The notes under the pieces are model-generated. The model was not told the origin of the DNA. It saw only the letters and a program-made list of their open reading frames with translations, and did not search any database. From the IMG/VR virus record IMGVR_UViG_3300043418_000072, positions 186,001-250,000 of that record: DNA of 64,000 bases. One strand, given 5' to 3'. This document shows, piece by piece, positions 25,889-60,076 of this stretch; the stretch's first letter is position 1, and the number at the start of each line of letters is the position of its first letter. The position numbers and the translations under genes were made by a program.

Positions 25889-27091
25889 CTATTCTATAAA
25901 ATTAGGTGGGTCGTTATATTTAACCACTTTGTCAGTAATCTCTATCTTTTTAAAACCCTGCTTTTTAATTTCAGTTAGGGTGTACATATATGGTGTAAGA
26001 GTACGCTCTAAAATACTCTTTAGTCCACGGGCACCAACTTTTTGCTGCACTGCTAAGTCGGCTACTGCTTCAATGGCTTCCGGTGTAAACAGTAATTCCA
26101 CTTCGTCTGACGAGAAGTAAAACTTCATCTGTGCAAGCAAGTTGTTCTTAGGTTCAGTTAGAATCTTAACAAAGTCATCCTTGCTTAGTTCGTCAATTTG
26201 CACAGAGATTGGGAAACGTCCAGTAAACTCCGGTATCATCCCAAACTTTTGGAAATCGTCCGGGGTCACTTCTGTAACATCAATTTGGTCTTCATTGGCT
26301 GAGTTGAATCCAATACTGGTTCCTCGCTGCCTACGGTCGACAATCTTAGGTAGTCCAGCAAAGGCACCGCCGGCAATAAACAAGATCTTGCTGGTATCAA
26401 TTTCCACTTGATCCATTGCTGGATGCTTCTTGCCACCATTTACACTAACCTTGCACTTGGTACCTTCTACTAGCTTGAGTAGAGCTTGTTGTACTCCTTC
26501 GCCGCTTACGTCACGAGTTAGGCTAGCTGATTCACTTTTACGTGCAATTTTGTCTACTTCATCAAGGAAGATAATACCTTGCTCACAACGGGCAACATCG
26601 TATTCTGCTGCTGCTAGCAAGCCCGAGATGATGCTTTCAACATCATCCCCTACATATCCTGCTTCGGTTAGTGTAGTTGCATCTGCTACAACAAAGGGCA
26701 CGTTTAGATAACGTGCGATTGTTTTGGCTAGTAGTGTTTTACCTGAGCCAGTTGGGCCGTGAATTAGAATGTTTGACTTTTCTAGTTCAACTGAACTTTC
26801 GAAGAAGATGCGTTTGTAGTGATTAACCACTCCCACACTAATTGCAATTTTGGCAGCGTCTTGGCCGATAATGTATTCGTCTAAGTGCTGTTTGATTTTG
26901 ATTGGATCAAGTGCCTTGCCAATTTTCTTATCCTTGCGAATATGATCGTTAGCTTCTTTGTTAATGATGTTGCTACAAAGCGTGATACATTCATTACAAA
27001 TGCCCGCGTCGTTGGCTACAATTAACTTCTCAACTTCATTACGGCTTTTACCACAGAAGTTACAGTGGATCGGTTGAATGGTTTCGCTCAT
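25889..27091 (-). CDS. clpX: ClpX AAA+ unfoldase
   Basis: CNFCGK..ICNEC zinc-binding domain, [39 protein letters not shown] loop, GARGL. Confidence 0.97.
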
Positions 27092-30107: not shown

Positions 30108-30512
30108 TTACTTAACCAATGCGTAGGGCTTGTCCCAACGGCCCACGTTTACATCCACATACCAACCAACGTTGAAGTAGTCGGTCTGGATGTCGCTTTT
30201 GTCCCAATTGCCGTCATTCATGACTGCAAAGATTTTACGCAAAAACACAAGAGCAACACCATCAAAGTGTTCCTGAAACCAGTAAGGATTCACGTCCAGT
30301 GAGCCTTCTGCTTTGCGCCAATCGCGCCCGTGTGCTTTAGATTCGCTAACTCGGTTCGCGTTACCAATGAAGTCAATTTCACCTTGGCTAATGTTAAGCA
30401 CAAGGGTAGAGTGATGACGTACTGCAATGCTGGCCTTGACCTTGTACTCTTTGCAAATTGCACGAAGTTGTGGGGCCAATTTTGCTTTAAGTTCTTGACT
30501 AACGTATGCCAT
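30108..30512 (-). CDS. conserved early phage protein
   Basis: MAYVSQE...DKSDIQTDYFNVGWY; AGGAG RBS; early promoter upstream. Confidence 0.8.
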   Translation of the reverse strand: MAYVSQELKAKLAPQLRAICKEYKVKASIAVRHHSTLVLNISQGEIDFIGNANRVSESKAHGRDWRKAEGSLDVNPYWFQEHFDGVALVFLRKIFAVMNDGNWDKSDIQTDYFNVGWYVDVNVGRWDKPYALVK

Positions 30513-33377: not shown

Positions 33378-34283
33378 TTAGGCCACCTCCAAATAGTTGC
33401 GTACCCATGCTAGACGAGCTTGCTCATCCATTGCTGTATATTCTTCAATGTTAGCACGGATAGCGTCCACCAGTGGGTAGTACTCTTCGTCTAACTGCTT
33501 CTTAATATCAGCTTGCATGTTAACCAGCTTGTCTGTGCGTGGATTGCGAGAAACCCACTTTGAGGTCAAGTAGTACGGGCTTTTGATTTTAGCACTCACA
33601 CCGGTGTCGGTATAGAACACATAACCTTCATGCTTACATTCCTTTGACATTTGCACAAGGTGTTCCATATTAGTTGTTACACTTTCTGGACAATAGCACT
33701 TGAACACTTCTGCCAATTCTTTAAGCATAGCTGGGTCATGTCCTACACGGCTACCCCATTCGTTCTCACGGTAACCCAAAATGTACATACCAGCCTTTTC
33801 AGGAATGATATGTGGGTCAGAGGGATGCACACACTCAAACATATAAGTCATGCCACGTAAGTCAGCTGAGCACATTGCCATTTGCCAGTCTGCCCAAGGC
33901 ATGTGCTTCTGCATCATTTCCTTGGCGTACTCAACATAGTCGTTGGCAGTAGATCCAGTAGTGGAAACCAACACGTCGCCGTTATACCAAGTACATGCAA
34001 CCATGAAGCCGTTTACTTTACGGAAAGCAGTTACCTTAGTATCTGGAGCAAGCACTGGTGCTTCCTTTTCGATACCATAGTTGTAGATCTTTGTGAATGG
34101 ATATGTAACTAGGTTAAAATCCGCATCCACAATACTTCCACGGCATTCAGCAATGTATTCGTTCCACAAGTTATCGTAGAACACTTTCTTCTTGTACTTG
34201 AGCACATAAATGTCTGGGCCACACTCTTTCATGTTAACTAGTCCCGACGAGTTTACGTACTCTTTTAGCTTGTCCTTAAACAT
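33378..34283 (-). CDS. T4 Rnl1-like RNA ligase
   Basis: ECRG, PFTKIYN, KVNG (motif I variant), YMFE, HII, EGYV, AKIKSPYY; start reassigned to MFKDKLK. Confidence 0.88.
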   Translation of the reverse strand: MFKDKLKEYVNSSGLVNMKECGPDIYVLKYKKKVFYDNLWNEYIAECRGSIVDADFNLVTYPFTKIYNYGIEKEAPVLAPDTKVTAFRKVNGFMVACTWYNGDVLVSTTGSTANDYVEYAKEMMQKHMPWADWQMAMCSADLRGMTYMFECVHPSDPHIIPEKAGMYILGYRENEWGSRVGHDPAMLKELAEVFKCYCPESVTTNMEHLVQMSKECKHEGYVFYTDTGVSAKIKSPYYLTSKWVSRNPRTDKLVNMQADIKKQLDEEYYPLVDAIRANIEEYTAMDEQARLAWVRNYLEVA

Positions 34284-34737
34284 ACCAAATTTCCTTAAAG
34301 CCTTCTTCTTCAGAGGGCATTTCCAAATTATCAATCATGCTGCGCATAACATGCTCGGGAATTGTTTTACCCAGGCGGCTTTCTAAACGACGAGCATGTT
34401 CTTCGGGCTCAGGAGTTCTAAACACCACTGCAATCTTTTCGTACTTGGGCAACATGGCCAATTTCTTTGCACGGCTTTTTGCTGAGGTGTTGGTTTGATC
34501 CCAAATCACGTCTGTGCCATTTGCTTGGCAGATCAACACTTGGTTATCCATCAAGCGCATAGCAATAGGCGCATATTCTTTGAACACTTCGTTGTAAGTC
34601 TTGCCTTCTTTTTCAGCATACTCGTCAATGAAGCGATCGCTGCTAACTACAGGCATGTCCTTAGTCCAGTCTTGCGACTTGATCCAAGTGCTCTTGCCGC
34701 TAGCGGGCACTCCGATTAACATATACAATTTGTTCAT
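34276..34737 (-). CDS. P-loop polynucleotide kinase-like (AAA_33) protein
   Basis: LIGVPASGKST, SSD, WDQTN...R; leaderless start MNKLYML. Confidence 0.88.
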   Translation of the reverse strand: MNKLYMLIGVPASGKSTWIKSQDWTKDMPVVSSDRFIDEYAEKEGKTYNEVFKEYAPIAMRLMDNQVLICQANGTDVIWDQTNTSAKSRAKKLAMLPKYEKIAVVFRTPEPEEHARRLESRLGKTIPEHVMRSMIDNLEMPSEEEGFKEIWYV

Positions 34738-34743
34738 GTGTGT

Positions 34744-34772
34744 ATTATAGCAAGAAACCCATTTCGGGTCAA
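34744..34772 (-). promoter_or_regulatory. sigma70 early promoter (copy 6)
   Basis: GGTTGACCCGAAATGGGTTTCTTGCTATAAT. Confidence 0.8.
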
Positions 34773-34778
34773 CCAAAA

Positions 34779-40118: not shown

Positions 40119-40406
40119 TTATGACCCAATTTCCACGTCGGGACTACCTGCTGCAATAGCATGGCCGCAGCTGAGATCACTGCCCACAAAGGCAATACCT
40201 TTGCCATTGGCAATCACTGTGCTGCTAGCGGTAGCAACCGTTGCGGCTTGATGTGGGGGATGAGGGGCTCCGTACGGAGCATGACTGCTATCTAGACTGC
40301 CCTCTAATGCAGCACCTTGCCCGTTGATAATAACATCAGTACTAACGTCGCCACAAATTTGGCCGTCGCTAGTGTCTGCATCATTTAGGCGTGCTGCTGC
40401 TGGCAT
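40119..40406 (-). CDS. PAAR domain spike-tip protein
   Basis: MPAAARLND, V.INGQGAA, SCGH.IA.GSPDV. Confidence 0.9.
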   Translation of the reverse strand: MPAAARLNDADTSDGQICGDVSTDVIINGQGAALEGSLDSSHAPYGAPHPPHQAATVATASSTVIANGKGIAFVGSDLSCGHAIAAGSPDVEIGS

Positions 40407-49347: not shown

Positions 49348-50410
49348 TTACTTGAGTGATACGGGATGCTGGCCATTCAGTCCAGTCCCGTGTCATTAAC
49401 AGTTGAAAGTTATGTTCAACAATAGGCTTGATCTTGGCATAGATAACATCTTGATCTTGCTCACAAAGCCACTTAACCTGCTCAAATGCGGCAGTATAAC
49501 GCTCGTTATCGTCTTTAATCAAGTCATAAGACTCGTCAATTACTCCATCAAATGTTTTGAAGCCCAATGCACGTAGATTGTGCATAAACTTGTAACCTGT
49601 AAAGGCAATAAACAGTCGACGACCAATCATTGGCTTGGCTGTCTTCTCGGTGAAGCAGCTTAGTGTGTTATCAAAGTCAGTTTCTGCAATGATACTGTAT
49701 GCTGTTTCGTTGAATGTCTTGATAGGAATGATCTGACTTAGGTGTACACGTTGCCCGCAATAGTCTGCCCAGTCGGCAGTGCCAATGGTTTGGCCAATTG
49801 GCGTTGTTCCTTCTTCCCAGATAAAATAATCCTTGGCATAGAATTCGCCTTCTTTCCAGTCGCCACCGTAAGTCATTACAACTTTGTCATTTAACTGGTT
49901 ATCGTTAACTGCCTTAAACACAAAGTCTCTATGTGGCTTGGGACTGCCTAGCAAGGCATCGAAGTACTTGGGCTTGGTAGCAGAGTAGTTGATGTGCATT
50001 ACTTTGTCGGGCAATGCTTTGTAAATGTTCGCAGTTGTTTTAAACCAGTCGCCCCAGCATAGGATGTGACTGTTAATGTCATCTCTGTCGTTTACTGCAC
50101 CGGGTAGCATCCAGTAGACATTGTCATGATGACATTGGTCCCAAATTTGCCAATGGAAGTTGTGCAATTCGCTTTCAAAGGTGAAAACTAAATCACTAAT
50201 GTAACTTAAACGGTTTATCTTATCTTCGAATCCAACGTAGGCTGTGTCAAAGTCACAGTGTAGTCGGTGTGTAGTAAATGCTATCTTAGTGTCAACTTGT
50301 GCTGCTTCATATTCGTCAATGCTGTGACAAATTGTGTATGGGCGGTTGAACTGTATTTTTGGAAGCCACTCTAAGTCAATAATCTGACTATCACTGTAAA
50401 CTAGAATCAT
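49325..50410 (-). CDS. phage glycosyltransferase-like protein (family member 3)
   Basis: FDALLG..KPHRD, SQIIP, IIAET...TEKTAKPMIGRRLF, GFKTF..VIDESYD; closest to 7427. Confidence 0.55.
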   Translation of the reverse strand: MILVYSDSQIIDLEWLPKIQFNRPYTICHSIDEYEAAQVDTKIAFTTHRLHCDFDTAYVGFEDKINRLSYISDLVFTFESELHNFHWQIWDQCHHDNVYWMLPGAVNDRDDINSHILCWGDWFKTTANIYKALPDKVMHINYSATKPKYFDALLGSPKPHRDFVFKAVNDNQLNDKVVMTYGGDWKEGEFYAKDYFIWEEGTTPIGQTIGTADWADYCGQRVHLSQIIPIKTFNETAYSIIAETDFDNTLSCFTEKTAKPMIGRRLFIAFTGYKFMHNLRALGFKTFDGVIDESYDLIKDDNERYTAAFEQVKWLCEQDQDVIYAKIKPIVEHNFQLLMTRDWTEWPASRITQVINSTIVG

Positions 50411-50783
50411 TCTTTGCTCGATAATTTTCAATTGCTGCTTTGATTGCATCCTCAGCTAAGATGCTACAATGGATTTTAACTGGTGGTAGAGCTAGCTCGC
50501 CTGCGATCTCACTGTTTGTGATGCTTGCTGCTTCGGACAGACTTTTTCCTTTAACCCACTCAGTAACCAATGAGCTGCTTGCAATAGCACTCCCGCAACC
50601 ATAAGTCTTAAAACGTGCATCGGTGATAATTCCATTCGAGTCTACCTTTATTTGTAATTTCATTACGTCGCCACAAGCGGGTGCGCCAACCATACCAGTG
50701 CCAACATCGCTGTCCTCACTCGCAAAAGAACCCACATTACGTGGGTTCTCATAGTGATCAATTACCTTGTCTGAATATGCCAT
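50391..50783 (-). CDS. iscU: Fe-S cluster scaffold IscU
   Basis: YSDKVIDHYENPRNVG, APACGDVM, FKTYGCGSA, LPPVKIHCS. Confidence 0.98.
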   Translation of the reverse strand: MAYSDKVIDHYENPRNVGSFASEDSDVGTGMVGAPACGDVMKLQIKVDSNGIITDARFKTYGCGSAIASSSLVTEWVKGKSLSEAASITNSEIAGELALPPVKIHCSILAEDAIKAAIENYRAKNDSSLQ

Positions 50784-50813: not shown

Positions 50814-51236
50814 TTAGCCACGGTTTCCTAGTGCCCTGTTAGCCATACTGCTAACAGTTTTCTCAGGAGCAGTTTGTGCTCCGTCTTCTGCACCAGGAGT
50901 CGATTCATCACCGAAACCGTCATCACTAAATGTAGCCAAGTAAACGTACTTAACGCCGTTTTCGTCGTCTTTAATATCTGTGATTAAGTTTTTGATTGTG
51001 TCGTTGCTCTTACGTGCAGACTCTAGTGCATCTGCGTTAAACGATTCACCACCTGGTAAACGCTTAACTAGATTAACTAAGCTGTCAACACGTACCTTAG
51101 GGACTGAATGCCCGTGAGCACGATTACGTAATTCTTCAAGAGCTGTGGCTAAGACGCTATCTCCACGAGTTTCTGCCTCGTCTTCGATCATTGCGCCTAT
51201 GCCGCTGTCTTCAACAATAATTTCTGCGAATCGCAT
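50814..51236 (-). CDS. putative head-associated protein
   Basis: MRFAEIIVE leader; C-terminal V.SMA.RA. Confidence 0.65.
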   Translation of the reverse strand: MRFAEIIVEDSGIGAMIEDEAETRGDSVLATALEELRNRAHGHSVPKVRVDSLVNLVKRLPGGESFNADALESARKSNDTIKNLITDIKDDENGVKYVYLATFSDDGFGDESTPGAEDGAQTAPEKTVSSMANRALGNRG

Positions 51237-51919
51237 TAGCGTACTTCTCTGCCTAAGTCGGCTGTACCGCCAGTTGCTGCATCGCTGGCACCGAAGTCTG
51301 CGCCTTGGTCCATGTCACTCATTTCACCGTCAAGACCGCCGTCCATGCTTGGACCTAAGTCTGCGCCGCCCATGCCCATATCTTGGCCCATGTCTTCGCC
51401 GGCTAAGCCACGTGCTGCTGAATCAGCAGTTTCGCGACCTTGTTGTAGTGTTTGTGCCAAATTGCCTAGCAATGGGCTAACTGCGCTCTTAAAGCCGTCA
51501 GCTTTTTCAATGCCAATTTGGTCACGGATTGTGTCTAACAATGCAGGCAACTGCTCGTTCTGCATTTTGCTGATTTTTTCCAACATGTCTTGGATGCTAT
51601 CAACCATGTCTTTTGCAGCTAAGATAGCTTCAGACTTGGCCATTTCGCTTTCGTTGATCAACTGTTGTTTGTTGTCACGCATCCAGCTGTGTAGGCTCTC
51701 ACGTACCATAAGCATTTCCATGTAAGATGGATTCTTTTCAGCGGTGTGAACGCCGTGTGTGCTCTTAATCTTGTTTAGGCTTTCGCTGATAGCAGTTGCC
51801 ATCGTGTAAGCCTTCTTGAAGGTTAAGTTTGCATAGTCAACTTGGAAACCAAAGCGGCTTTCCATGACTTTGTTCATTTGTTTTGCGGTTGGCTTAGCGC
51901 CCATTTCGTTTAATCTCAT
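51236..51919 (-). CDS. putative prohead core/scaffold-like protein
   Basis: MRLNE and QLINE sites; helical core; acidic Gly/Met-rich tail. Confidence 0.6.
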   Translation of the reverse strand: MRLNEMGAKPTAKQMNKVMESRFGFQVDYANLTFKKAYTMATAISESLNKIKSTHGVHTAEKNPSYMEMLMVRESLHSWMRDNKQQLINESEMAKSEAILAAKDMVDSIQDMLEKISKMQNEQLPALLDTIRDQIGIEKADGFKSAVSPLLGNLAQTLQQGRETADSAARGLAGEDMGQDMGMGGADLGPSMDGGLDGEMSDMDQGADFGASDAATGGTADLGREVR

Positions 51920-51924
51920 AGTGG

Positions 51925-52452
51925 TTATTCCCAGATACCTTTTAGATATTTAGCCTGATTTAAAGTTTTTTCAAGATCTATTTTAGCTAGATCTAACATG
52001 ATACTATTATCTGTTATTCTAGCATCTAATACGTCAACTGTAAACATGTCATCGCGCTTAATTGCTCGATTTCTGTTGTGTACGTAATAGATTTTATCCT
52101 GTGTTAACTTACTTAGTGTCGTATCGTTTCGGTATAAATTCTGTGCTTGCTTCAAGCGGCCAGTTTGATATAGCAACGAGTACGTCACAGCGGATTGTTT
52201 GCAAGTAAACGTGGCCATCAACTCAGTGAAGTCGTTGAATAGTTGCCAGACACCTGCTGACTGTTTTATAGAGTGCTTACCAACTTGCCATCCATCCTTA
52301 GTGGGGATGATCAAGGGTTCGCTTTTTATTAGTTTTTGAGTTTCATTTTTAGTCCAGGTTTTGACATATTGTGCAGCTAAATCTACTGCTACCATTGCCT
52401 CGACTATTTGCCCATTAGTTATGGGATTTTTTCTTGTACGTGATTTGGCCAT
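51925..52452 (-). CDS. conserved hypothetical protein
   Basis: Clean ORF in a late operon. Confidence 0.7.
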   Translation of the reverse strand: MAKSRTRKNPITNGQIVEAMVAVDLAAQYVKTWTKNETQKLIKSEPLIIPTKDGWQVGKHSIKQSAGVWQLFNDFTELMATFTCKQSAVTYSLLYQTGRLKQAQNLYRNDTTLSKLTQDKIYYVHNRNRAIKRDDMFTVDVLDARITDNSIMLDLAKIDLEKTLNQAKYLKGIWE

Positions 52453-52627
52453 CTTGATTCTTTCTCAACAATACATCTTTGTTGACTAATTGATTTGCAA
52501 TGTGAATTTCGCGCTCGTTCAGGTCGGCCCGTTTAATTATTTCGTGTTCATTAAATTTGCCCAACACATCCGCTTCTTCGTTTGTGATGGACAATCTAAT
52601 GTGATTTAATAGTTCAACAATTTTCAT
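52415..52627 (-). CDS. small winged-helix-like protein
   Basis: ITNEE...L.ERE..IANQLVNKDVL.R. Confidence 0.6.
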   Translation of the reverse strand: MKIVELLNHIRLSITNEEADVLGKFNEHEIIKRADLNEREIHIANQLVNKDVLLRKNQDGQITYKKKSHN

Positions 52628-52881
52628 TTGTTGACGAAGTTAACTAGCACAACAACAAAACCGGAGATCAACACGCCAATGATTGCTGTACCAATAGTGA
52701 TAATTGTTTTGTTTGATGCGTCAGGAGCAGCGGCAAGCGATTCTTTAATACTCACGATTAAATCCTCAACGCGACTCATTCTTTCATCAAGACTGTTTAG
52801 CTTAGTGTCCAAATTCTTATACCTTTCAGCACATAATTCTACGTGCGCTTCAAGATTCTCTTTTTCAATTTCCGTCGCCAT
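52624..52881 (-). CDS. coiled-coil protein with a C-terminal TM segment
   Basis: LEAHVELCAERY coiled coil; TM at C-terminus; AAGGA RBS. Confidence 0.7.
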   Translation of the reverse strand: MATEIEKENLEAHVELCAERYKNLDTKLNSLDERMSRVEDLIVSIKESLAAAPDASNKTIITIGTAIIGVLISGFVVVLVNFVNK

Positions 52882-52912
52882 TGCGATATTCCTTATTTGT
52901 TAATCAGATAAC

Positions 52913-52973
52913 AATGCTGTTGAGTGTGCCAAAGTGTGTGCCATAAAAGAGTGCCTGTGTGTGCCGTAGCATT
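52913..52973 (-). repeat. four GGCAC repeats enclosed by an AATGCT/AGCATT stem in a late-gene leader
   Basis: GTGCC on the plus strand at 52926, 52938, 52951 and 52961; inverted hexamers at 52913-52918 and 52968-52973. Confidence 0.7.
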
Positions 52974-53481: not shown

Positions 53482-53925
53482 TTATGCTAGCTTTAAGCCG
53501 CCTGTACTAGCAACTGATACGCTAGACACAGTGCTGTTACCGTATACACCAAGTTGTGTAATGTTTGCACGAATATATGCTTGCAATTCTGCATCTGTCC
53601 ATGCACTGTGTTCTACTAATGCGCTTAGTTGATTGCTGCCGCTTTCAACTTGGTATGCCACAACAGTGTTACGTTGTTGAATCACTCCGAGCATCTGCGA
53701 TACTAAACCAACGTTACCTGTTGTACGGTTAATGCCGCTTTCAAGAGTTAAGTTGCTTGCAGCATACCCGCCAACACCTGTAATCTTATATGCAGTGATG
53801 CGGCCACTCATGCCAGGTGCAATAATGCCAGTGGCAGTACGTGCTGAGCCGTCTGTGTTACTATCAATGTCTGTTGCAACTACTGCGGTTGCATCGCCGT
53901 TTACTTTTAATGCGCCTAAGGCCAT
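53482..53925 (-). CDS. putative virion structural (decoration-like) protein
   Basis: Own late promoter, GGAG RBS and terminator; MALGALKVNG shared with its neighbour. Confidence 0.6.
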   Translation of the reverse strand: MALGALKVNGDATAVVATDIDSNTDGSARTATGIIAPGMSGRITAYKITGVGGYAASNLTLESGINRTTGNVGLVSQMLGVIQQRNTVVAYQVESGSNQLSALVEHSAWTDAELQAYIRANITQLGVYGNSTVSSVSVASTGGLKLA

Positions 53926-53961
53926 GTTATATCTCCAATATACTATATTTAGTTAGCCATT

Positions 53962-54005: not shown

Positions 54006-54404
54006 TTAAGCGAATGTGAATGTACCAGCGCCGTTCAACACGCTAGATGAAGTAACTGTCAAGTTACCAGCACCCATGCCTGTTGCAGATGCAACTGCAT
54101 CCTTCAAAGCACCGTAAGCACCAGATGTTGTTGCACCTGCGCCTGCGTTGAATGTAGCAGCATCAACAATAACACACAAAGATGCGTTAGTTTGTGCGCC
54201 TGCCCATACGATAGAACCCAATGTTTCTACTGCACGGATACCTTGGTCGTAGCCACCTTCAACCAATGGTGCAGATTGACTTGTACCACCTGTTGCTGCT
54301 GTGAAGCCAGACTGGCTGTCAGCAATTTTAAGAACCAATGGTTGGTAACCTTGGAACGCACCTGCGGCTGCTTTGCCGTTTACTTTTACTTGTCCTAATG
54401 CCAT
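54006..54404 (-). CDS. putative virion structural (decoration-like) protein
   Basis: MALGQVKVNG; Ala/Gly/Thr-rich; own promoter and terminator. Confidence 0.6.
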   Translation of the reverse strand: MALGQVKVNGKAAAGAFQGYQPLVLKIADSQSGFTAATGGTSQSAPLVEGGYDQGIRAVETLGSIVWAGAQTNASLCVIVDAATFNAGAGATTSGAYGALKDAVASATGMGAGNLTVTSSSVLNGAGTFTFA

Positions 54405-54477: not shown

Positions 54478-55596
54478 TTACTTGTTAAAATGCGCTGCGC
54501 CGAACTGCCCACGATTTACAATTTTAACCAGGCCATTTGGGCTCGGAAATACAAATCCTTCGCCACCGGGTTGGCCACCACTAAACTGTTCTAGTCCCTT
54601 AACTTGAGATTCAAGCTGTTGACTTAGGTTAACTTTAAACGCATAGATTGCGTTCCATATTGCTTTAAGGCCTATGTAACCTGGACTTTCGTCTAGGCCG
54701 CCTTCTGCATTTTGTGCATACAACGCACCAGGAGTTTCCTGATCGCCTACTAGGATTTGAAACTGCTTTCCGCTAGCTTTTGCTTTCAAGAACTCAACAA
54801 GATCCCTGCCTTCGGGCTGGTTAGTAATGCGCTTGTTAAAGAATTGCTGTAGCAGAGCTTTTGCTGTTCCAGACTGTGTAGCAAGGAACTGGTCCACAAT
54901 CGGGCCCCACTTTTTGATTGCTGCATCTGCTGCTTTAGAAAGCTGCACAGGTTCTTTGAGGCTAAACTTAATGCCTAAAGTAGGGTTAATAATAGCCACA
55001 CCGCCTGGAATATTACGCAAACCGTTGCCGTTCCATGGCGTTTTTGTACCACCAGGGGAATCAGACTGTACGTGTACAACAATGCCTGCAATAGTTCTGT
55101 TAATTAAATGTCCTAGTTCACTTTCAATGGGAACACGGTACTCAACAGTTGGGCCCTTAAACACAAAGCGTCCATGGATAGGAGTTAGTGGCTCGCTGTA
55201 CATTAGGTCACCGAAGAACCATCCTGGCCCAACAACTGCTTTATCTAATGCAGGCCACATTTGTGCTAGCTTTGCATATAAGTCATCACGAGTTGTTCCC
55301 GACTTCTTTTGTAAATCGTATTCACGCCATTGCTCGGGGCTAGTTGCTAGAACACCTTTGTCTGGCATGTACTTGTCAGTTACTACTAACTGTCCTTGTT
55401 CATTGCGACCGAACCACAATGCAATACCACCATCCCATTTAATACTCATATTACCAGCTTGGGCAATAGCACCCCTAAGTCCTGCAAGAGCTCGTGCAGC
55501 ATCTGCACTGCCATTGGGTCCAAAGATAGCATCCTCTGGATGGGGAATACGTGGATCTGCTGCTTCAGTCAGCATGTTAATAAAGCTGAATTTCAT
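54478..55596 (-). CDS. ATP-dependent ligase-fold nucleotidyltransferase (DUF6267-like)
   Basis: SIKWDG (motif I KxDG), FGDLMY (III), EGFV (IV), LVKIVNR (V); MLTE leader. Confidence 0.7.
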   Translation of the reverse strand: MKFSFINMLTEAADPRIPHPEDAIFGPNGSADAARALAGLRGAIAQAGNMSIKWDGGIALWFGRNEQGQLVVTDKYMPDKGVLATSPEQWREYDLQKKSGTTRDDLYAKLAQMWPALDKAVVGPGWFFGDLMYSEPLTPIHGRFVFKGPTVEYRVPIESELGHLINRTIAGIVVHVQSDSPGGTKTPWNGNGLRNIPGGVAIINPTLGIKFSLKEPVQLSKAADAAIKKWGPIVDQFLATQSGTAKALLQQFFNKRITNQPEGRDLVEFLKAKASGKQFQILVGDQETPGALYAQNAEGGLDESPGYIGLKAIWNAIYAFKVNLSQQLESQVKGLEQFSGGQPGGEGFVFPSPNGLVKIVNRGQFGAAHFNK

Positions 55597-56612
55597 TATG
55601 CGAATAGTCCTCTAACCATGTCAAGACCCTGCTGGATCTTTTGTCTGTCTTGTTCTGCTCTAGCAATAGCATCAGGTGTTTGTGCCTTGTCGCGTTTCTT
55701 GCCTGCGATATCAATCATGGCTTTTTCTTCGTAACGTTGCCAAAACTGCTGTATAAAATCCTGTGCGCTTGAGAAGTTAGCAAAATCGCCTTGTCCCATC
55801 ATGCCACTGGCTTCTGCGCTGCGGGCAAATCCCTTAACGCCGTTAACTAGTTTAGCAATTTTAACATCATTTAAGTCGTTGCCTGGAAATTGCTTTAGCA
55901 ATGAATCGATACGTGGTTGCACGCCTTGTTGTTGGGCTTCGTAGTTAAACAAATCTAGGATATAGGTGCTAGGGTTAGTTGTGATAGTAACAACTTGTGT
56001 GCCCTTTTGTTTACTAAACGGAACGTGTTGATTGTCAATAACCTTTAGCTGCACACCCGCATGTTGAATACTAATATCCAACAGCTCGCCTAGCACACTA
56101 AACATGTTGCCAGTTAGCAAGCCCTTGACCCCACGCTCAGGAGTAACACGGGCTGCGCCCCATTGCTCTAAACGCTCGGGATGCCACATAAAGTCAATCT
56201 GTACGTAATCGTTTGCGCCAATTTGGAAAATAGGGTGACCGGGTTTGCTTTCGCTTGTGTCCACATAAGGAGCATGACCTTCTTTAACAAACTGATCTGC
56301 TAGCTTGTTCCAGTTTCCTGTAAACTGTGCAAATGTTGCACCTTCAAACTCAGGTCCGATCATTTGTAAGTCAATGTCTCCGTAGACCTTGTCTGGTTGT
56401 TCTGCTGTGTCTGCTTCGTGATGTGCGCTGCTACCTGTAGGGCGGCCTCTGCGTACAGGGCCCAATCCCTTAGGCTCTAGCCATTTGTTAAAGTCCATAA
56501 CAAACTTGTCAACTACTGCTAGCGCAGGAGCAACAATTTTAGGATGTAGGACTGTGTTTTGTGTTAAGGTAGTGTCCCACCCACCTTCTCTTAGAATTTC
56601 AAAAATTTTCAT
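55596..56612 (-). CDS. Pol-beta superfamily (PolX-like) nucleotidyltransferase
   Basis: TGS...YGDIDL...VQIDFM three-Asp signature; MKIFEILRE leader. Confidence 0.7.
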   Translation of the reverse strand: MKIFEILREGGWDTTLTQNTVLHPKIVAPALAVVDKFVMDFNKWLEPKGLGPVRRGRPTGSSAHHEADTAEQPDKVYGDIDLQMIGPEFEGATFAQFTGNWNKLADQFVKEGHAPYVDTSESKPGHPIFQIGANDYVQIDFMWHPERLEQWGAARVTPERGVKGLLTGNMFSVLGELLDISIQHAGVQLKVIDNQHVPFSKQKGTQVVTITTNPSTYILDLFNYEAQQQGVQPRIDSLLKQFPGNDLNDVKIAKLVNGVKGFARSAEASGMMGQGDFANFSSAQDFIQQFWQRYEEKAMIDIAGKKRDKAQTPDAIARAEQDRQKIQQGLDMVRGLFA

Positions 56613-57367
56613 AGTAAACTGCTATACTTTCTAAACCACGTTGCTGTACCAGGTGCAACGTCTTCGGGTAATGTTAGTAATCCCTTGGATTGGTCCTGTC
56701 TGGCTTGTGCTAGTTTACCTTCGCGATCTGGGTCGTTTGTTAGTGCGGCCATAATAGTGCCTACACTGTTTAAATCTGCTGCCTTTGCTTTGGGATTAAG
56801 CAAAACTTTTGCGGCAGCATCTCTATTGTTTGCTACCACTTCGTTATTGTCTCTGCGCAATACGTTGCCAGCAAAGGCATCTACTTTAAGCCCAAGATGC
56901 TTACCAATGCTGTTTAACAAAATAAAGATTTGCGCTGCTTTAAACTTGGGATCTTCGTAACTGCCGCGTGGGCCATGCTGGTGCCAATCTGCTACACGGG
57001 TAGCATCTGGTATAACCATTAAGTCAACTTGAGCTGCACGATTGCCTGCTTCAGTTTTGTAAGGAACTTCAATATGCACGTTGCGACCTGAGATTTTGGC
57101 CTTGTAGCCTTTAGCCATCATAAACTCTGCTAGAGCTACTTTAGCTGCCTTCTCATCTGCTGCACCAAACTTCTTCATTACAGTCTCTGCATCTAAAAAC
57201 AAGTCCATGTCACCTGCTGATACTTTGAAGCCTGCTGAGCCAATGTCAGCAATGGCCTTTAGCCCAGCAGGTAGGTCTGCTTGTACATGGGCAATGATGC
57301 CCTGTACTGCCTCTTTGGGAATGTCGCCATCCCCGAAAATGTTTCCACCTTCGTACAAATGCATCAT
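56609..57367 (-). CDS. Pol-beta superfamily (PolX-like) nucleotidyltransferase
   Basis: IGSAG..SAGDMDL...QVDLM; thumb-like GS...IGKHLGLKV...G; HLYE leader. Confidence 0.72.
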   Translation of the reverse strand: MMHLYEGGNIFGDGDIPKEAVQGIIAHVQADLPAGLKAIADIGSAGFKVSAGDMDLFLDAETVMKKFGAADEKAAKVALAEFMMAKGYKAKISGRNVHIEVPYKTEAGNRAAQVDLMVIPDATRVADWHQHGPRGSYEDPKFKAAQIFILLNSIGKHLGLKVDAFAGNVLRRDNNEVVANNRDAAAKVLLNPKAKAADLNSVGTIMAALTNDPDREGKLAQARQDQSKGLLTLPEDVAPGTATWFRKYSSLL

Positions 57368-59790
57368 TTGATTCTCTTCATTTTACGCCATAGTGTTTCG
57401 GCTATGTCAATTTTGCTTTCAGCCATTGCTGGTTGTGCTGCTGCTGCGGCTTGTACTTTCTTGTTGTAAGCGTCCACTTCGGCAGGGGTTGCACCACCCG
57501 AAACAACCTTAGGTTGCTTTGGTTGCGCTGGTGTTGCTGGCTTAGCTGCTGTAGGAGTTGTGTTTACAGTAGTTGTAGTCTTACCGTAGCCGCCCATTTG
57601 CTGACCAAAGTTTGGTGCTGCTTTAGGAGCTGCTGGTTTAATTCCGGCCATCTTAGCTGCTGACGCATAATCAAATCCAGTTGATCCAGTTACCGGGGTT
57701 GGCTTTGCTGCTGGAGCAGTTGTGGTAGGAGCGGGTGTAGCTTGCGCTGTTGCTGCCGGAGCAGGTGTAGCTTGCGCTGTTGCTGCCGGAGCAGGTGTGG
57801 CTGCTGGCTGTTGTGCTGCTGCATATTGCGAACGTAAATTGTTCATCGCTGCGCCTGCTGTTTTAGATGCATCTGCAGGTGGTGCTTTTGCTCCGCCGGT
57901 GCTTGCTGCATTGTACGAGTCAACTGCTTGACCTGCTTGCTGTGCGCCAGCGCCTTTTAGCAAACTAGATAAGAATCCGCCCTTTGTGGCGTTTGCGGCC
58001 TGTGACGATTTGTCAAGCGGGATATTCATGTCGGCGAATACGCTGTTAATTAAGTTATCCTTGACACCTTGGTCTTTAAGAAACTTAACTAGGTCTTCGC
58101 TGTTTACAGTCGGGGCTGCTGCTAACTTTGCGCCACGACGCCAATTCATGTCTAGCTTATCGTAAGTGATATTGTTAGTTGCTGCGTCTGCGCCAGCTGC
58201 GGCAATACGTTTTAGCGGTGCTGTTGCTTTACCAATTGCTGCGCCAGCTTGTTGGTTAAACGACTTTAGCTTATCTAATGCACCTTCGTTTAAACTTGCT
58301 TTAGCGATTGCACGGAAAATAGCTTTACGACCAGATTCTGTAATCTGTACGCCACCACGTGCTTTGCCCATACCTTCGCGTAAGACCCACATACGGATAG
58401 TCATGTCACGATCAATGTAGCTTTCACGTAAACGGATACCGTTTGCTGCGGCTCTGTTTAAACGATCAATGTAGGCATTACTAGTTGGTACATAGTTTCC
58501 TTGGGCACCTTGTTGAGTTGCGTAATCTGCGTCTACTTTATCCTGCACCGTTTTGTTTAATTCAACTTGGTTGCGGGCTTGCTGTGCAAAATCTGTAGAC
58601 GGTTCTGCAACTGGTGTTGCGGCTTGCTGTGCTGCGCTTATGTTTGATGTTCGACCACTTAATTCGTCGGCTTGTGCTTGCGGCATTGTGCTAGACGCAG
58701 TTGGTCCACCTGCGCCAACCCCATTGGCATAAACATTACTGCCAGTCTCTGCAGGGATATTGATATTTTGTCCTACTGCAATCTTGTGTACATCAGTGAT
58801 CTCTGGGTTAGCAGCTTGTAATTCTTCTACTGATACACCATTGGCTTTGGCAATCTGACTCAGTGACTCACCTTTTGTTACAGTGTGTTGAATTACTTCG
58901 CCTGCATCAACTCCGCCCATGTCTACACTACCAGCGCCAGTTGGCTGTAAGCTATTGCTAACCGAAATATCTTGTAACTGCGCTGCTGGCATTCCAGTAG
59001 CTTGCTCAATTGCTGTTTTACCCGCTTCATCTGCATCAAGCCACTGCTGTGCTGCATCTACATCTGCTTGTGCGTTCATTGCTGCATCGGCGTCAGGTAA
59101 TTGTAAATCTTGGCTTGCTTCTGGCTCAGCTGCTGCATCCGGCTCTGTAGTTGCTGCATCTGGTGCATCGGCTAATAAGTCTTTTGCCACGTGCATAGCT
59201 GCTACAGTTCCGCCTGTTGCTAATGCGCTACCAACTGCGCTAGAGAATTTGTTACCTTGCAACATTTTGTTAGCAAATGTTAATCCTGCTGCGATACCAA
59301 CTGGGCCAAGGCCCGAACCTGCTAAACCCGCAAGACCAACTACGATTGCTTTAATAGCAAGAGCCATGCCCGGTACTTTACTTAATTCACGGTACCAATC
59401 AAGCGCCTGTTGCACCTTGCCTGCGTCGCCGCCTGCTGCTGACATAATTTCTTTTTGCGCTTGGTCGATCATTGCATCTAAGCCAGCAACTGGTCCAGAA
59501 TTACCAATCCAGTTACCAACGTCTTTAAATGCAGAAGATACTTTACCAGCAACGTCAACGCCTTTACCTAATAGGGTACGGTTGCTTGCTTGATCGTCTG
59601 TAGAGAATTCTGTGTTTGCACCTGCTGCTGCGCCGTCGGCTACACGCTGAAATGCTTGTTTGACTTGATCTTGTGTTAGGTCTGCTTCTTTAAGCAAGCG
59701 ACCGAGATTGTACAATTTCTTGTAATTTGGATCTTCAATTAATCGTTGCTTTGCTCTTACATTTTCCGATAGGATGCTGTTAATTCTCAT
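57364..59790 (-). CDS. large LysM-domain virion (ejection-like) protein
   Basis: HTVTKGESLSQIAKANGVSVEELQAANPEI...IAVGQNINIP (LysM); hydrophobic Gly-rich hairpin; Ala/Pro-rich linkers; MRINSILSE leader. Confidence 0.8.
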   Translation of the reverse strand: MRINSILSENVRAKQRLIEDPNYKKLYNLGRLLKEADLTQDQVKQAFQRVADGAAAGANTEFSTDDQASNRTLLGKGVDVAGKVSSAFKDVGNWIGNSGPVAGLDAMIDQAQKEIMSAAGGDAGKVQQALDWYRELSKVPGMALAIKAIVVGLAGLAGSGLGPVGIAAGLTFANKMLQGNKFSSAVGSALATGGTVAAMHVAKDLLADAPDAATTEPDAAAEPEASQDLQLPDADAAMNAQADVDAAQQWLDADEAGKTAIEQATGMPAAQLQDISVSNSLQPTGAGSVDMGGVDAGEVIQHTVTKGESLSQIAKANGVSVEELQAANPEITDVHKIAVGQNINIPAETGSNVYANGVGAGGPTASSTMPQAQADELSGRTSNISAAQQAATPVAEPSTDFAQQARNQVELNKTVQDKVDADYATQQGAQGNYVPTSNAYIDRLNRAAANGIRLRESYIDRDMTIRMWVLREGMGKARGGVQITESGRKAIFRAIAKASLNEGALDKLKSFNQQAGAAIGKATAPLKRIAAAGADAATNNITYDKLDMNWRRGAKLAAAPTVNSEDLVKFLKDQGVKDNLINSVFADMNIPLDKSSQAANATKGGFLSSLLKGAGAQQAGQAVDSYNAASTGGAKAPPADASKTAGAAMNNLRSQYAAAQQPAATPAPAATAQATPAPAATAQATPAPTTTAPAAKPTPVTGSTGFDYASAAKMAGIKPAAPKAAPNFGQQMGGYGKTTTTVNTTPTAAKPATPAQPKQPKVVSGGATPAEVDAYNKKVQAAAAAQPAMAESKIDIAETLWRKMKRIK
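57728..57798. repeat. 30-bp in-frame tandem repeat (about 2.4 copies, ATPAPAATAQ)
   Basis: GGAGC(A/G)GGTGTAGCTTGCGCTGTTGCTGCC repeated. Confidence 0.85.
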
Positions 59791-60031
59791 TGTTTCTTAG
59801 TCTCCGTACACCACGTGTGAATTTTTGTGGATCCTGCGAACGGATACTGTTTAGAAGCCTACGCTCAAGTTCAGCAGATGTCTCAGCATCATAATTTTCC
59901 TTGATATAGTTTACTAAATTGATAGCACTAGCGATCACATTATTAGCACGGCTTTCAATAAGGCTTTCTTTGTCCTTTTGTGCACCGATACTAGCAAGTT
60001 CGTCTAGGATACTACGAGTACGTTTTTGCAA
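59780..60031 (-). CDS. conserved late hypothetical protein
   Basis: Probable TTG start (MQKRTRSILDEL) after GGAG; LERRLLNSIRSQDPQKF. Confidence 0.7.
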   Translation of the reverse strand: MQKRTRSILDELASIGAQKDKESLIESRANNVIASAINLVNYIKENYDAETSAELERRLLNSIRSQDPQKFTRGVRRLRNNEN

Positions 60032-60053
60032 GATTTGCTCCAATTTAGTATAT

Positions 60054-60076
60054 TTAGTTGGCGAATCGCCAACTAA
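60054..60076. terminator. perfect 10-bp hairpin after the helicase gene, overlapping a late promoter
   Basis: TTAGTTGGCG-AAT-CGCCAACTAA; CTAAATA on minus at 60051-60057. Confidence 0.55.

What the first reader, a model, noticed from the sequence alone, without database searches (positions are those of the whole stretch)
54478..57367. Candidate virion-delivered nucleic-acid repair kit: two PolX-like nucleotidyltransferases plus a ligase-fold enzyme, all with head-packaging leaders
Seen: three translationally coupled late genes lie downstream of the LysM virion gene. Two have the Pol-beta superfamily GS...GDxD...QxD signature, and one of these also has a PolX thumb-like segment. The third has ligase/capping-enzyme motifs KxDG, GD, EGFV and K. 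Each begins with a leader ending [L/I]-x-E (HLYE, MKIFEILRE, INMLTE). Established: T4 gp21 protease cleaves after L/I-x-E, and T4 internal proteins use an MKTxxEFIxE capsid-targeting leader and are injected with the DNA; PolX plus ligase is a minimal gap-fill-and-seal pathway. Inference: the phage may pre-load end-healing and sealing enzymes that act before any transcription, to circularise the genome, repair restriction/CRISPR cuts, or re-tail and religate tRNAs cut by host defences. Protein NMPylation or signal-nucleotide synthesis are alternative activities.
Basis: partly seen in the sequence, partly recalled or inferred. Interest (0 to 1): 0.85.

Follow-up and report, generated by a model that had tools for sequence, protein, structure and literature searches.

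The report
Jumbo-phage PolX-like and ligase-like trio
An uncultivated 354-kb phage has a conserved, probably late operon encoding two polymerase-X-like nucleotidyltransferases and a ligase-like enzyme of an unassigned family (DUF6267), each starting with a short peptide that resembles a head-protease cleavage tag. This suggests a nucleic-acid mending kit that may be loaded into the virion, but neither the activities nor the packaging has been shown.

Summary
Three overlapping minus-strand genes follow an 808-aa LysM gene: A 56609-57367, B 55596-56612 and C 54478-55596.

- **A and B:** both keep an invariant Pol-beta catalytic signature (GS...GDxD...QxD). B's model matches only family-X polymerases at the top of a PDB fold search, and A's family has PolX-like predicted structures.
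- **C:** it is Pfam DUF6267. It has an invariant KxDG lysine and later ligase-like motifs, and its nearest folds outside the family are RNA and DNA ligases, with weak scores.
- **Linkage:** the trio is syntenic in about 60 related metagenomic loci, and A and C are often fused.
- **Expression:** a T4-late-like [AC]TAAATA motif conserved in orthologues precedes the operon. The neighbouring helicase and primase genes have sigma-70-like promoters.
- **Leaders:** [I/L/V]-x-E directly precedes GGWD in B (118/118) and GGN in A (113/113), and lies just before HPED in C (120/120). It is kept at internal domain junctions. Some B relatives keep the N-terminal leader with unrelated domains inserted after it.
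- **Nearest cultured relative:** in PA5oct the syntenic block consists largely of MS-detected virion proteins, including an A homologue but not the ligase-like protein.

Packaging and a repair function remain inferences. Verdict: partly supported; a new variant of known kinds.

The parts
60049..60058 (-). ACTAAATATA, a T4-late-like promoter motif 14 nt upstream of the first gene of the operon
   Evidence: Exact 10-mer also lies upstream of 53482-53925 and 16415-17437. TAAATA is present upstream of the s87 orthologue in all 23 distinct related loci. 19 of 34 [ACT]TAAATA sites in the window lie 7-90 nt upstream of a start codon on the same strand.
59780..60043 (-). s87, a small conserved protein and first gene of the operon
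   Evidence: Syntenic in related loci. 46% identical to PA5oct gp259 (E 1.6e-21), which RefSeq annotates as a virion structural protein.
57364..59790 (-). 808-aa LysM protein with leader MRINSILSE and long Ala/Pro/Gln-rich regions
   Evidence: Pfam LysM at residues 302-346, E 4e-12. Length and sequence vary between related loci, and the protein was not detected in many of them.
56609..57367 (-). A: 252-aa minimal PolX-like (Pol-beta superfamily) nucleotidyltransferase
   Evidence: Invariant GS..GDxD..QxD. Atlas structure neighbours include PolX (TM 0.59) and NTP_transf_2. The family has 1175 representatives at 50% clustering. PA5oct homologue gp253 was MS-detected.
57350..57367 (-). A leader MMHLYE, ending in L-x-E directly before GGN
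   Evidence: [L/I/V]-x-E before GGN in 113/113 close homologues, and in 118 of about 130 regex-defined GGN-type domain starts among the 149 best-scoring family representatives, including internal ones. Most of the remainder look like spurious pattern matches. Six members start M-(G/S)G(N/K) with no leader.
57203..57241 (-). A catalytic motif G43 S44 ... G52 D53 M D55. The third carboxylate D115 is at 57023-57025.
   Evidence: Invariant columns.
55596..56612 (-). B: 338-aa PolX-like nucleotidyltransferase with a C-terminal helical domain
   Evidence: AF2 pLDDT 87.4, pTM 0.84. Foldseek PDB ranks 1-47 are all pol lambda/beta, best E 9e-4, prob 1.0, TM 0.3-0.4.
56586..56612 (-). B leader MKIFEILRE, ending in L-x-E directly before GGWD
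   Evidence: Residues 1-10 have pLDDT below 50. [I/L/V]-x-E before GGWD in 118/118 homologues. In longer relatives several unrelated segments (GNAT, a second NTase and others) sit between the retained N-terminal leader and a second [hydrophobic]-x-E before GGWD.
56370..56435 (-). B catalytic motif G60 S61 ... G78 D79 I D81. The third carboxylate D140 is at 56193-56195.
   Evidence: Invariant columns.
54478..55596 (-). C: 372-aa DUF6267 protein, a ligase-like covalent nucleotidyltransferase
   Evidence: Pfam PF19782, E 9e-18, 65 bits against a cut-off of 27. AF2 pLDDT 91. The nearest non-family folds are RNA/DNA ligases. Language-model neighbours are mainly PF09414 RNA_ligase clusters, 78 of 100 hits.
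55564..55596 (-). C leader MKFSFINMLTE, ending in L-x-E, followed by a short linker and the invariant HPED motif
   Evidence: Residues 1-13 have pLDDT below 50. [LIVM]-x-E lies 6-17 residues before HPED in 120/120 homologues, including A-C fusions where it is internal.
55429..55440 (-). C motif I, K53 W D G (candidate nucleotidyl-lysine)
   Evidence: Invariant, including in S-PM2d138 and Melnitz_16.
54511..54561 (-). C motifs IV/V-like: E346 G F V F ... K358 I V N R362
   Evidence: K358 and R362 are invariant across the family. E346 is E/D/N in the cyanophage relatives. PA5oct gp256 has EGYVIR...VKIVDK at the matching place.

Best explanation
The operon s87-LysM-A-B-C is transcribed late. It makes two active Pol-beta/PolX-fold nucleotidyltransferases (A, B) and a DUF6267 enzyme (C) that works like an ATP-dependent ligase through a lysyl-NMP intermediate on K53. 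A and C act together, since they are often one polypeptide elsewhere.

Each protein is made with an N-terminal extension ending in [I/L/V]-x-E. I infer that this extension is a T4-type targeting and cleavage peptide. It would bring the protein into the prohead core, and a gp21-type prohead protease would cut after the Glu, leaving mature GGN... (A), GGWD... (B) and a trimmed C. The enzymes would then travel with the DNA into the next host and extend and seal broken nucleic-acid ends before phage gene expression.

Status of each step:
- Shown: the genes, the motifs and their conservation, the synteny and the fusions.
- Supported by prediction: the folds and the promoter class.
- Inferred: cleavage, packaging, ejection, and whether the substrate is RNA or DNA.
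For: Folds and motifs.

Linkage:
- The gene order primase-helicase-s87-(LysM)-A-B-C-downstream block is conserved in about 60 loci.
- A-C fusions.
- DUF6267 is the commonest partner of A-like domains, in 27 of 61 multidomain representatives.

Late class:
- [AC]TAAATA is conserved upstream of s87, g147 and g227 orthologues, while helicase and primase carry TTGA..TATAAT-type sites.
- In the window the motif also precedes a tail-spike-like gene and a gene similar to a virion protein.

Leader as a separable, cleavable module:
- It is disordered in both models.
- It is kept at the extreme N-terminus when extra domains are inserted, with a second [hydrophobic]-x-E at the B junction.
- L/I/V-x-E precedes internal GGN domains in distant family members, whereas six members and PA5oct gp253 begin M-(G/S)G(N/K).
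- T4 gp21 cuts after L/I-X-E, and 10-19-residue propeptides target internal proteins into the head (PMC9026906).
- T4 Alt begins MELITE.

Virion link:
- In PA5oct (helicase 45% identical) the syntenic block is largely ESI-MS/MS virion proteins. These include the A homologue gp253 (BLASTP 2e-14 to an A-type domain; hhalign 5e-4), the g155 and g227 homologues, and the leader-bearing gp246.
- PA5oct has a gp21-like protease (37% identical to T4 gp21).
- Other leader-bearing late genes in the window look like delivered proteins: a GH19 lysozyme-like fusion, and a weak, sub-threshold match to a polyvalent-protein kinase domain.
Against: - No virion or transcript data exist for this phage.
- Its own prohead protease was not found. 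It is not in the window, and the scan hit other contigs.
- The Glu before GG(N/WD) is invariant even at internal positions, which could mean it belongs to the fold rather than to a cleavage site.
- PA5oct's ligase-like gp256 and the neighbouring gp255 were not MS-flagged, and no B counterpart was recognised there.
- The PA5oct list of 93 particle-linked proteins includes 7 virion-unrelated enzymes, so MS detection is not proof of packaging.
- S-PM2's DUF6267 protein has no leader and sits among replication genes.
- C's fold matches to ligases are weak: PDB E at least 0.1, BFVD 2.6e-3.
- Sequence profiles of A, B and C hit no solved structure.
- The window already has a canonical Rnl1-like ligase with an adjacent kinase.
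Confidence: 0.45

Rival explanations
1. The enzymes are made late but stay in the cytoplasm. They would be a PolX-like gap-filler plus ligase that tidies replicated or recombined phage DNA (gaps and nicks) before packaging, or that stands in for a missing gp30-type DNA ligase. The N-terminal peptides would then have another role or none.
For: - The genes lie directly after primase and helicase here.
- DUF6267 genes lie directly after gp41 helicase and MazG in S-PM2, and after the DnaB-like helicase in Melnitz.
- A tblastn with T4 gp30 finds too few Synechococcus phage records to reach the top ten organisms (all with at least 63 records). The gp21 and helicase searches find 379 and 376. Cyanomyoviruses therefore seem to lack a gp30-type ligase.
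- S-PM2d138 has no leader.
- PA5oct's ligase-like gp256 was not MS-flagged.
Against: - A promoter-class switch separates helicase from the operon.
- The operon includes a LysM protein and is followed by a block whose PA5oct counterparts are virion proteins.
- Leader behaviour in fusions is hard to explain without processing.
- C's nearest folds are RNA ligases rather than DNA ligases, and it has no OB domain.
Confidence: 0.2
2. It is an RNA (tRNA) repair set of the RlaP-plus-RNA-ligase kind. The NTases would restore nucleotides lost from cleaved RNA ends and C would reseal them, whether or not the proteins are pre-packaged.
For: - Pol-beta NTases that accompany RNA ligases are a described theme in jumbo phages (RlaP, PF10127; PMC7824862; bioRxiv 10.64898/2025.12.29.696909).
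- C's language-model neighbours are PF09414 RNA_ligase clusters.
- Its structural neighbours include Trl1, Rnl3, REL1 and phage RNA ligases.
- C has helical modules in place of an OB domain.
Against: - A and B do not match PF10127 at E up to 1.
- B's best structural matches are DNA polymerases of family X.
- The window already encodes an Rnl1-like ligase with an adjacent AAA_33 kinase.
- The genes are linked to DNA replication genes in several phage groups.
Confidence: 0.2
3. They are delivered anti-defence effectors that act on nucleotides, signals or proteins rather than on broken nucleic acids. The NTases would make or modify small nucleotides or NMPylate proteins, and C would adenylylate a non-nucleic-acid substrate.
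For: - Multidomain relatives of A carry CTP_transf_like (7), NT5C (2), NUDIX, Amidoligase_2, ART-PolyVal, the Thoeris inhibitor Tad3 and GNAT domains.
- B relatives carry GNAT or a second NTase.
- S-PM2d138 fuses DUF6267 to CTP_transf_like.
Against: - The partners other than DUF6267 are each rare.
- The PolX-like thumb region and the ligase-type motif order point to polynucleotide substrates.
- There was no match in NCBIfam. PADLOC was not searched.
Confidence: 0.1

Closest known systems
RlaP (PF10127) Pol-beta NTases paired with RNA ligases in phage and bacterial RNA-repair loci
   Same: A Pol-beta-superfamily NTase genetically coupled to an ATP-dependent ligase-type enzyme, predicted to restore and reseal ends. 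The theme is common in group 2/3 jumbo phages (PMC7824862).
   Different: A and B do not match PF10127 and look PolX-like by fold. There are two NTases. The ligase partner is DUF6267, not Rnl1, Rnl2 or RtcB. The genes sit in a late operon with cleavage-tag-like leaders, next to virion-type genes.
T4 internal proteins and Alt (capsid-targeting propeptides cut by gp21 after L/I-X-E)
   Same: Short N-terminal extensions ending in I/L-x-E and portable to unrelated cargo domains. The proposed outcome is enzymes injected with the DNA (PMC9026906). Alt begins MELITE.
   Different: The cargo here would be nucleic-acid enzymes. Cleavage and packaging are not demonstrated. The motif is also kept at internal domain junctions.
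ASFV Pol X plus ASFV ligase, and giant-virus PolX-ligase fusion proteins
   Same: A minimal PolX-type polymerase working with a ligase as a viral gap-fill-and-seal pair. Atlas structure neighbours of A and B include Nucleocytoviricota ligase-PolX fusions.
   Different: These are eukaryotic viruses with canonical ATP- or NAD-dependent DNA ligases with OB domains. That ASFV packages these enzymes is from my memory and was not checked here.
DUF6267 proteins of T4-like cyanophages and relatives (S-PM2d138, Melnitz_16)
   Same: The same Pfam family (E 1.6e-111 and 3.6e-105), with the same invariant HxED, KWDG, GDL, Y, H and K..R residues, and next to the replicative helicase.
   Different: 23-24% identity. 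The S-PM2 protein has no leader and is fused to a CTP_transf_like domain. No A- or B-type NTase was recognised next to them.
Polyvalent proteins of phages and conjugative elements
   Same: Many A-family members are large multidomain proteins. One carries ART-PolyVal, and a leader-bearing neighbour gene has a weak Kinase-PolyVal match. Delivery with the DNA is the proposed theme.
   Different: In this window the domains are separate small proteins, and no polyvalent-type processing peptidase is seen here.

Membership tests
Family X DNA polymerases (PolX) | Pol-beta-type palm with GS ... DxD ... D catalytic carboxylates | tested here: met
   Invariant in A and B. B's model aligns to pol lambda/beta at ranks 1-47. 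A's family model has TM 0.59 to a PolX cluster.
Family X DNA polymerases (PolX) | Thumb subdomain that follows the palm and contacts the nascent base pair | tested here: inconclusive
   Foldseek alignments cover about 190-215 columns of pol lambda/beta, but TM is only 0.3-0.4. The resemblance of B's LLTGNMFS and A's FK..IF...GK.LG to the PolX YFTGS/KG motifs is recalled from memory and was not tested.
Family X DNA polymerases (PolX) | Match to PolX sequence models (DNA_pol_B_palm/thumb, HHH_8, DNA_pol_lambd_f), including the 8-kDa and fingers domains | tested here: not met
   No Pfam family at E up to 1 for A or B. No PDB sequence or profile hit.
Family X DNA polymerases (PolX) | Template-directed DNA gap filling | not testable with these tools
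   Needs enzyme assays.
RlaP (PF10127) | Match to PF10127 | tested here: not met
   No Pfam hit for A or B at E up to 1.
RlaP (PF10127) | Gene neighbourhood or fusion with an RNA-ligase-type enzyme | tested here: inconclusive
   The link to DUF6267 is tight, but that DUF6267 is an RNA ligase is itself only inferred.
ATP-dependent ligase / capping-enzyme covalent nucleotidyltransferases | Motif I KxDG with an invariant lysine | tested here: met
   K53-W-D55-G56 is invariant across the jumbo-phage, S-PM2 and Melnitz members.
ATP-dependent ligase / capping-enzyme covalent nucleotidyltransferases | Motifs III, IIIa, IV and V in order | tested here: inconclusive
   Candidates are GDL (D130), Y153, EGFVF (E346, E/D/N in cyanophages) and VKIVNR (K358, R362), in the right order, with a roughly 110-residue helical insert before IV. 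The motif assignment is by eye.
ATP-dependent ligase / capping-enzyme covalent nucleotidyltransferases | Nucleotidyltransferase-domain fold | tested here: inconclusive
   PDB: the best hit is the Trl1 adenylyltransferase domain (E 0.11, prob 0.51), and the list is enriched in RNA/DNA ligases with TM below 0.25. BFVD: the first non-family hits are RNA ligases (E 2.6e-3 and 7e-3, prob 0.82-0.96). Most Atlas feature hits are PF09414, at scores of 0.72-0.77.
ATP-dependent ligase / capping-enzyme covalent nucleotidyltransferases | OB domain (DNA ligases and capping enzymes) | tested here: not met
   No OB Pfam hit. The model shows helical modules instead. RNA ligases do not require an OB domain.
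DUF6267 (PF19782) | Score above the Pfam gathering threshold | tested here: met
   65.2 bits against 27, covering residues 18-371.
T4-type propeptide-bearing head-internal proteins | Short N-terminal extension ending in L/I-x-E | tested here: met
T4-type propeptide-bearing head-internal proteins | gp21-type prohead protease encoded by the same phage | tested here: inconclusive
   It is not in the window. The scan of IMG/VR with a PA5oct-plus-T4 protease alignment returned 80 loci, none on contigs that carry B. It is present in PA5oct.
T4-type propeptide-bearing head-internal proteins | Presence of the processed protein in virions | not testable with these tools
   There is only an indirect indication: the PA5oct A-family homologue EST35_0231 is annotated 'structural protein, ESI-MS/MS'.

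The most novel reading that the evidence does not exclude
A large clade of uncultivated jumbo phages pre-loads its capsids with a processed PolX-like polymerase pair and a DUF6267 ligase. These would be delivered with the genome to mend nucleic-acid ends before any phage gene is expressed. This would be a phage counterpart of the enzyme-loaded virions of large eukaryotic DNA viruses. DUF6267 would also be a new ligase family, one that may fill in for the gp30-type ligase that cyanomyoviruses appear to lack.
Probability: 0.3. Interest if true: 0.8.

Novelty: new variant of a known kind. Interest (0 to 1): 0.62.

Why it matters
- **A function for a DUF.** It would give a first functional assignment (ligase-like covalent nucleotidyltransferase) to DUF6267. 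This family is conserved in T4-like cyanophages and many jumbo phages, and a full-text search found no paper on it.
- **A large unannotated family.** The A-type, PolX-like NTase family has 1175 representatives at 50% clustering. It obeys a simple rule, [L/I/V]-x-E before GGN, that can be tested as a protease site.
- **Delivered repair enzymes.** If packaging is real, phages would deliver polymerase and ligase activities with their DNA. That would be a new class of injected cargo, relevant to how large phages survive nucleases on entry.
- **An experimental route.** PA5oct, which can be cultured, carries recognisable counterparts (gp253, gp254, gp256).

Tried and rejected
- **Cultured-phage searches.** A DNA search of the region against cultured phages found nothing. 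tblastn of A and B found nothing.
- **Solved structures.** Single-sequence and profile searches of A, B and C against PDB sequences gave only chance hits.
- **A against B.** BLASTP and hhalign showed no detectable similarity despite shared motifs, so paralogy rests on fold and motifs only.
- **PA5oct counterparts.** gp255 against the B profile gave nothing, so no B counterpart was identified there. Melnitz_15 against the A and B profiles also gave nothing.
- **Family libraries and literature.** NCBIfam found nothing for A, B, C or the PA5oct proteins. PHROGs found nothing for A or B. Literature searches for DUF6267 and S-PM2d138 returned no papers. The PA5oct supplementary MS table is not held, so peptide-level evidence could not be checked.
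- **This clade's prohead protease.** I looked for it with a PA5oct gp152 plus T4 gp21 alignment. It returned 80 loci, none on B-bearing contigs.
- **bS21 phages.** I considered that the phage belongs to the published freshwater bS21 phages (PMC9723584) and rejected it. Those have 31-34% GC against about 44% here.
- **LicD/fukutin-type phosphotransferase.** I considered this reading for A and B because of the CTP_transf_like partners and rejected it. B's structural matches are PolX.


Full report
**What is there.** The minus strand carries four overlapping ORFs: the LysM protein (57364-59790, 808 aa), A (56609-57367, 252 aa), B (55596-56612, 338 aa) and C (54478-55596, 372 aa). Stop and start codons overlap as ATGA, ATGA and TAATG. 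An 87-aa ORF (s87, 59780-60043) overlaps the LysM start. Upstream lie a DnaB-like helicase, a primase and an endonuclease-V-like gene.

The window matches IMG/VR contig IMGVR_UViG_3300043418_000072 (354,098 bp), which is an uncultivated jumbo phage. By helicase similarity its nearest cultured relatives are Pseudomonas phage PA5oct (45% identity) and Agrobacterium phage Atu_ph07. Cultured phages have no DNA match to the region and no tblastn match to A or B. C has weak matches to S-PM2 and the Melnitz phages.

**The two nucleotidyltransferases.** A and B each have hundreds of metagenomic homologues.
- In 33-35 aligned sequences the Pol-beta catalytic signature is invariant. In A it is G43 S44, G52 D53 D55, Q113 D115. 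In B it is G60 S61, G78 D79 D81, Q138 D140.
- B's AlphaFold model is confident (pLDDT 87.4, pTM 0.84). Its 47 best PDB matches are all DNA polymerases lambda or beta (best E 9e-4, probability 1.0). TM-scores are only 0.3-0.4 over about 190-215 columns.
A near-identical-feature cluster in the ESM Atlas has a predicted structure with TM 0.59 to a family-X polymerase cluster. It also matches NTP_transf_2 and ligase-PolX fusion proteins. B gives a similar list.
- Neither protein reaches any Pfam, PHROG or NCBIfam model or any PDB sequence. The two are not detectably similar to each other by sequence.
- They are therefore PolX-like in fold and motifs, without the 8-kDa and fingers domains. They are not demonstrable members of the PolX or RlaP sequence families.

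**The third enzyme.** C matches Pfam DUF6267 over its full length (E 9e-18). No paper in the library mentions that family.
- Invariant residues, shared with the 23-24% identical proteins of S-PM2 and Melnitz, are H19-x-E21-D22, K53-W-D-G56, G129-D130-L131, Y153, H175, K358 and R362. E346-G347 is invariant within the jumbo-phage clade.
- Their order fits ligase motifs I, III, IIIa, IV and V, with a roughly 110-residue helical insert before motif IV.
- The model is confident (pLDDT 91). Its PDB matches are individually insignificant (best E 0.11), but they are mostly RNA and DNA ligases: Trl1, archaeal Rnl3, REL1, ligases I and III, and ASFV ligase.
- Against predicted viral structures, the hits after the DUF6267 relatives are RNA ligases at E 2.6e-3 and 7e-3.
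- With DUF6267 excluded, most language-model neighbours are PF09414 RNA_ligase clusters, at modest scores of 0.72-0.77.
- I rate 'ligase-like covalent nucleotidyltransferase' as probable (about 0.7). RNA-ligase-like is likelier than DNA-ligase-like, because there is no OB domain.

**Linkage.**
- In about 60 related IMG/VR loci the order is kept: primase-helicase-s87-(large variable protein)-A-B-C-g147-g155-g85-g70-g175-g227-g140. A second subclade has B-A'-C.
- A and C are fused in many proteins of 615-650 aa.
- A profile search found 1175 A-family representatives at 50% clustering.
- Of 61 multidomain members sampled, 27 also carry DUF6267. Rarer partners are CTP_transf_like (7), NT5C, NUDIX, Amidoligase_2, ART-PolyVal, Tad3 and GNAT.
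- The described analogue is the RlaP NTase that accompanies RNA ligases in jumbo phages (PMC7824862).

**Expression class.**
- The sequence ACTAAATATA lies 14 nt upstream of s87.
- TAAATA is present at the matching place upstream of every distinct s87 (23), g147 (16) and g227 (21) orthologue examined. Helicase and primase orthologues instead carry TTGA...TATAAT-type sites.
- In the window, 19 of 34 [ACT]TAAATA sites lie 7-90 nt upstream of a same-strand start. Those starts include a tail-spike-like gene, a gene with similarity to a virion protein, bS21 and Hsp20.
- The resemblance to the T4 late promoter TATAAATA comes from established knowledge. The timing itself is inferred.

**The leaders.**
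- [I/L/V]-x-E directly precedes GGWD in 118/118 B homologues and GGN in 113/113 A homologues. It lies 6-17 residues before HPED in 120/120 C homologues.
- Residues 1-10 of B and 1-13 of C are disordered in the models.
- In longer B relatives, several unrelated segments (a GNAT domain, a second NTase and others) sit between a retained N-terminal M[KR]xx[DE]hhxE leader and a second [hydrophobic]-x-E before GGWD.
- Among the 149 best-scoring A-family representatives, a pattern search found about 130 GGN-type domain starts. L/I/V-x-E precedes 118 of them, internal ones included, and most of the remainder look like spurious pattern matches. Six members begin M-(G/S)G(N/K) with no leader.
- PA5oct gp253 likewise begins MSGNAFG, directly after a separate small leader-bearing gene.
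- A free GGN N-terminus could thus arise either by Met removal or by cleavage. That reading is my inference.
- The same type of leader occurs on 7 of 77 window genes against 2 of 413 internal-Met controls (p = 5e-5). All seven lie behind the late-type motif or in operons that do.
- Two of the seven have informative matches: a GGACT plus GH19 lysozyme-like protein, and a protein with a weak, sub-threshold Kinase-PolyVal match.
- T4 gp21 cleaves after L/I-X-E, and 10-19-residue N-terminal propeptides target internal proteins into the T4 head (PMC9026906). T4 Alt begins MELITE.

**Virion link through PA5oct.**
- Downstream of PA5oct's primase and helicase lies a block that is largely annotated 'structural protein, ESI-MS/MS'.
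- Homology connects gp259 to s87 (E 1.6e-21), gp250 to g155 (1e-7) and gp247 to g227 (1e-11).
- gp253 (EST35_0231, MS-detected) is an A-family member. BLASTP gives 2e-14 to the A-type domain of an A-C fusion, and hhalign gives 5e-4 to the A profile.
- gp256 has KIDG and EGYVIR...VKIVDK and weakly matches the C profile, but it is not MS-flagged.
- gp246, which is MS-detected, starts (V)KIKDILVE.
- PA5oct encodes a gp21-like protease (PMC7318152) that is 37% identical to T4 gp21.
- The paper counts 7 virion-unrelated enzymes among its 93 particle-linked proteins, so MS detection is suggestive only.
- I could not show that this clade's own genome has the protease.

**Counter-current evidence.**
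- DUF6267 genes sit immediately after the replicative helicase in S-PM2 and Melnitz. S-PM2d138 has no leader and is fused to a CTP_transf_like domain.
- A T4 gp30 search finds too few Synechococcus phage records to reach the top ten organisms, unlike the gp21 and helicase searches. DUF6267 could therefore be a replication-associated ligase in those phages.
- The window also has a separate Rnl1-like ligase with an adjacent kinase.

**Verdict.**
The enzyme classes and their linkage are well supported, late expression is likely, and packaging through cleavable leaders is plausible (about 0.5).
- The 'repair kit acting before transcription' idea and its specific targets remain untested.
- The finding is a new variant of known kinds: NTase-plus-ligase repair pairs, and T4-type propeptide-targeted head cargo.

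Noticed in passing
window 15261-16418 (+), 16415-17437 (+), 18233-18772 (-), 50814-51236 (-), 51236-51919 (-), 52415-52627 (-), 57364-59790 (-): Other genes begin with the same kind of leader: MKITDVLDE, MKINEILTE, MRITEV, MRFAEIIVE, MRLNEM, MKIVELL and MRINSILSE. The first is a GGACT plus GH19 lysozyme-like fusion. The second has a weak Kinase-PolyVal match. Together they may be the phage's set of head-targeted proteins.
   Followed up: partly
window-wide, e.g. 60049-60058 (-), 53944-53953 (-), 16332-16341 (+), 15249-15258 (+): A [AC]TAAATA motif is strongly enriched just upstream of start codons and conserved in orthologous loci, so it is a candidate late promoter. Sigma-70-like TTGAC..TATAAT sites precede other genes, for example 30108-30512 and 6690-7013.
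   Followed up: partly
window 52882-52971, upstream of 52624-52881: A different conserved upstream element (GGCACA...GGC[AT]CA...GCATCG) precedes the g85 orthologues in most related loci. It may be a third promoter or regulator class.
   Followed up: no
window 54006-54404 and 53482-53925 (-): Two small Ala/Gly-rich proteins have similar N-termini (MALGQVKVNG / MALGALKVNG). Each has its own TAAATA motif and is followed by a strong hairpin terminator, as expected for abundant virion components. Their function is unknown.
   Followed up: no
window 25648-25881, 24835-25281, 25889-27091 (-): The phage encodes ribosomal protein bS21 (Pfam E 7e-17) and Hsp20, both behind the late-type motif, and a ClpX-like ATPase.
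   Followed up: partly
window 33378-34334 and 34276-34776 (-): There is a separate Rnl1-like RNA ligase (PHROG 562, E 2e-52) with an adjacent AAA_33 kinase, which is a conventional RNA-repair pair elsewhere in the window.
   Followed up: partly
L001 (S-PM2) 5863-7638; L002 (Melnitz) 5824-7080 and 7466-9418: In T4-like cyanophages and Melnitz, DUF6267 lies just after the replicative helicase. It is fused to (S-PM2) or lies near (Melnitz) a CTP_transf_like domain. Cyanomyoviruses appear to lack a gp30-type ligase.
   Followed up: partly
L084 (PA5oct) 8376-9334: PA5oct gp254 (81 aa, leader MRLDEIQSK) and gp253 (A-like, starting MSGNAFG) overlap as TAATG. They look like a split version of a leader-domain-NTase protein, and both are MS-detected. 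gp253 ends with DGFVFPT, which resembles C's EGFVFP motif.
   Followed up: partly
proteins P0363-P0509 (A-family representatives): A-like NTase domains occur in proteins of up to 1802 aa, with up to three copies. Single members carry ART-PolyVal, Tad3, Sigma70_r4, NUDIX and NT5C domains. Many of these proteins start with MK[IV]N[DE]-type leaders.
   Followed up: partly
window 50391-50783, 40119-40406, 12899-14179 (-): Auxiliary genes include a NifU/IscU-like Fe-S scaffold (E 3e-53), a PAAR-motif protein and a UDP-glucose dehydrogenase-like protein.
   Followed up: no
window 57364-59790 (-), protein residues about 145-180 and 640-700: The LysM protein has a Gly/Ala-rich hydrophobic stretch (AIKAIVVGLAGLAGSGLGPVGIAAGL) and a repeated ATAQATPAPA-type segment. 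Its length and sequence vary greatly between related phages.
   Followed up: no
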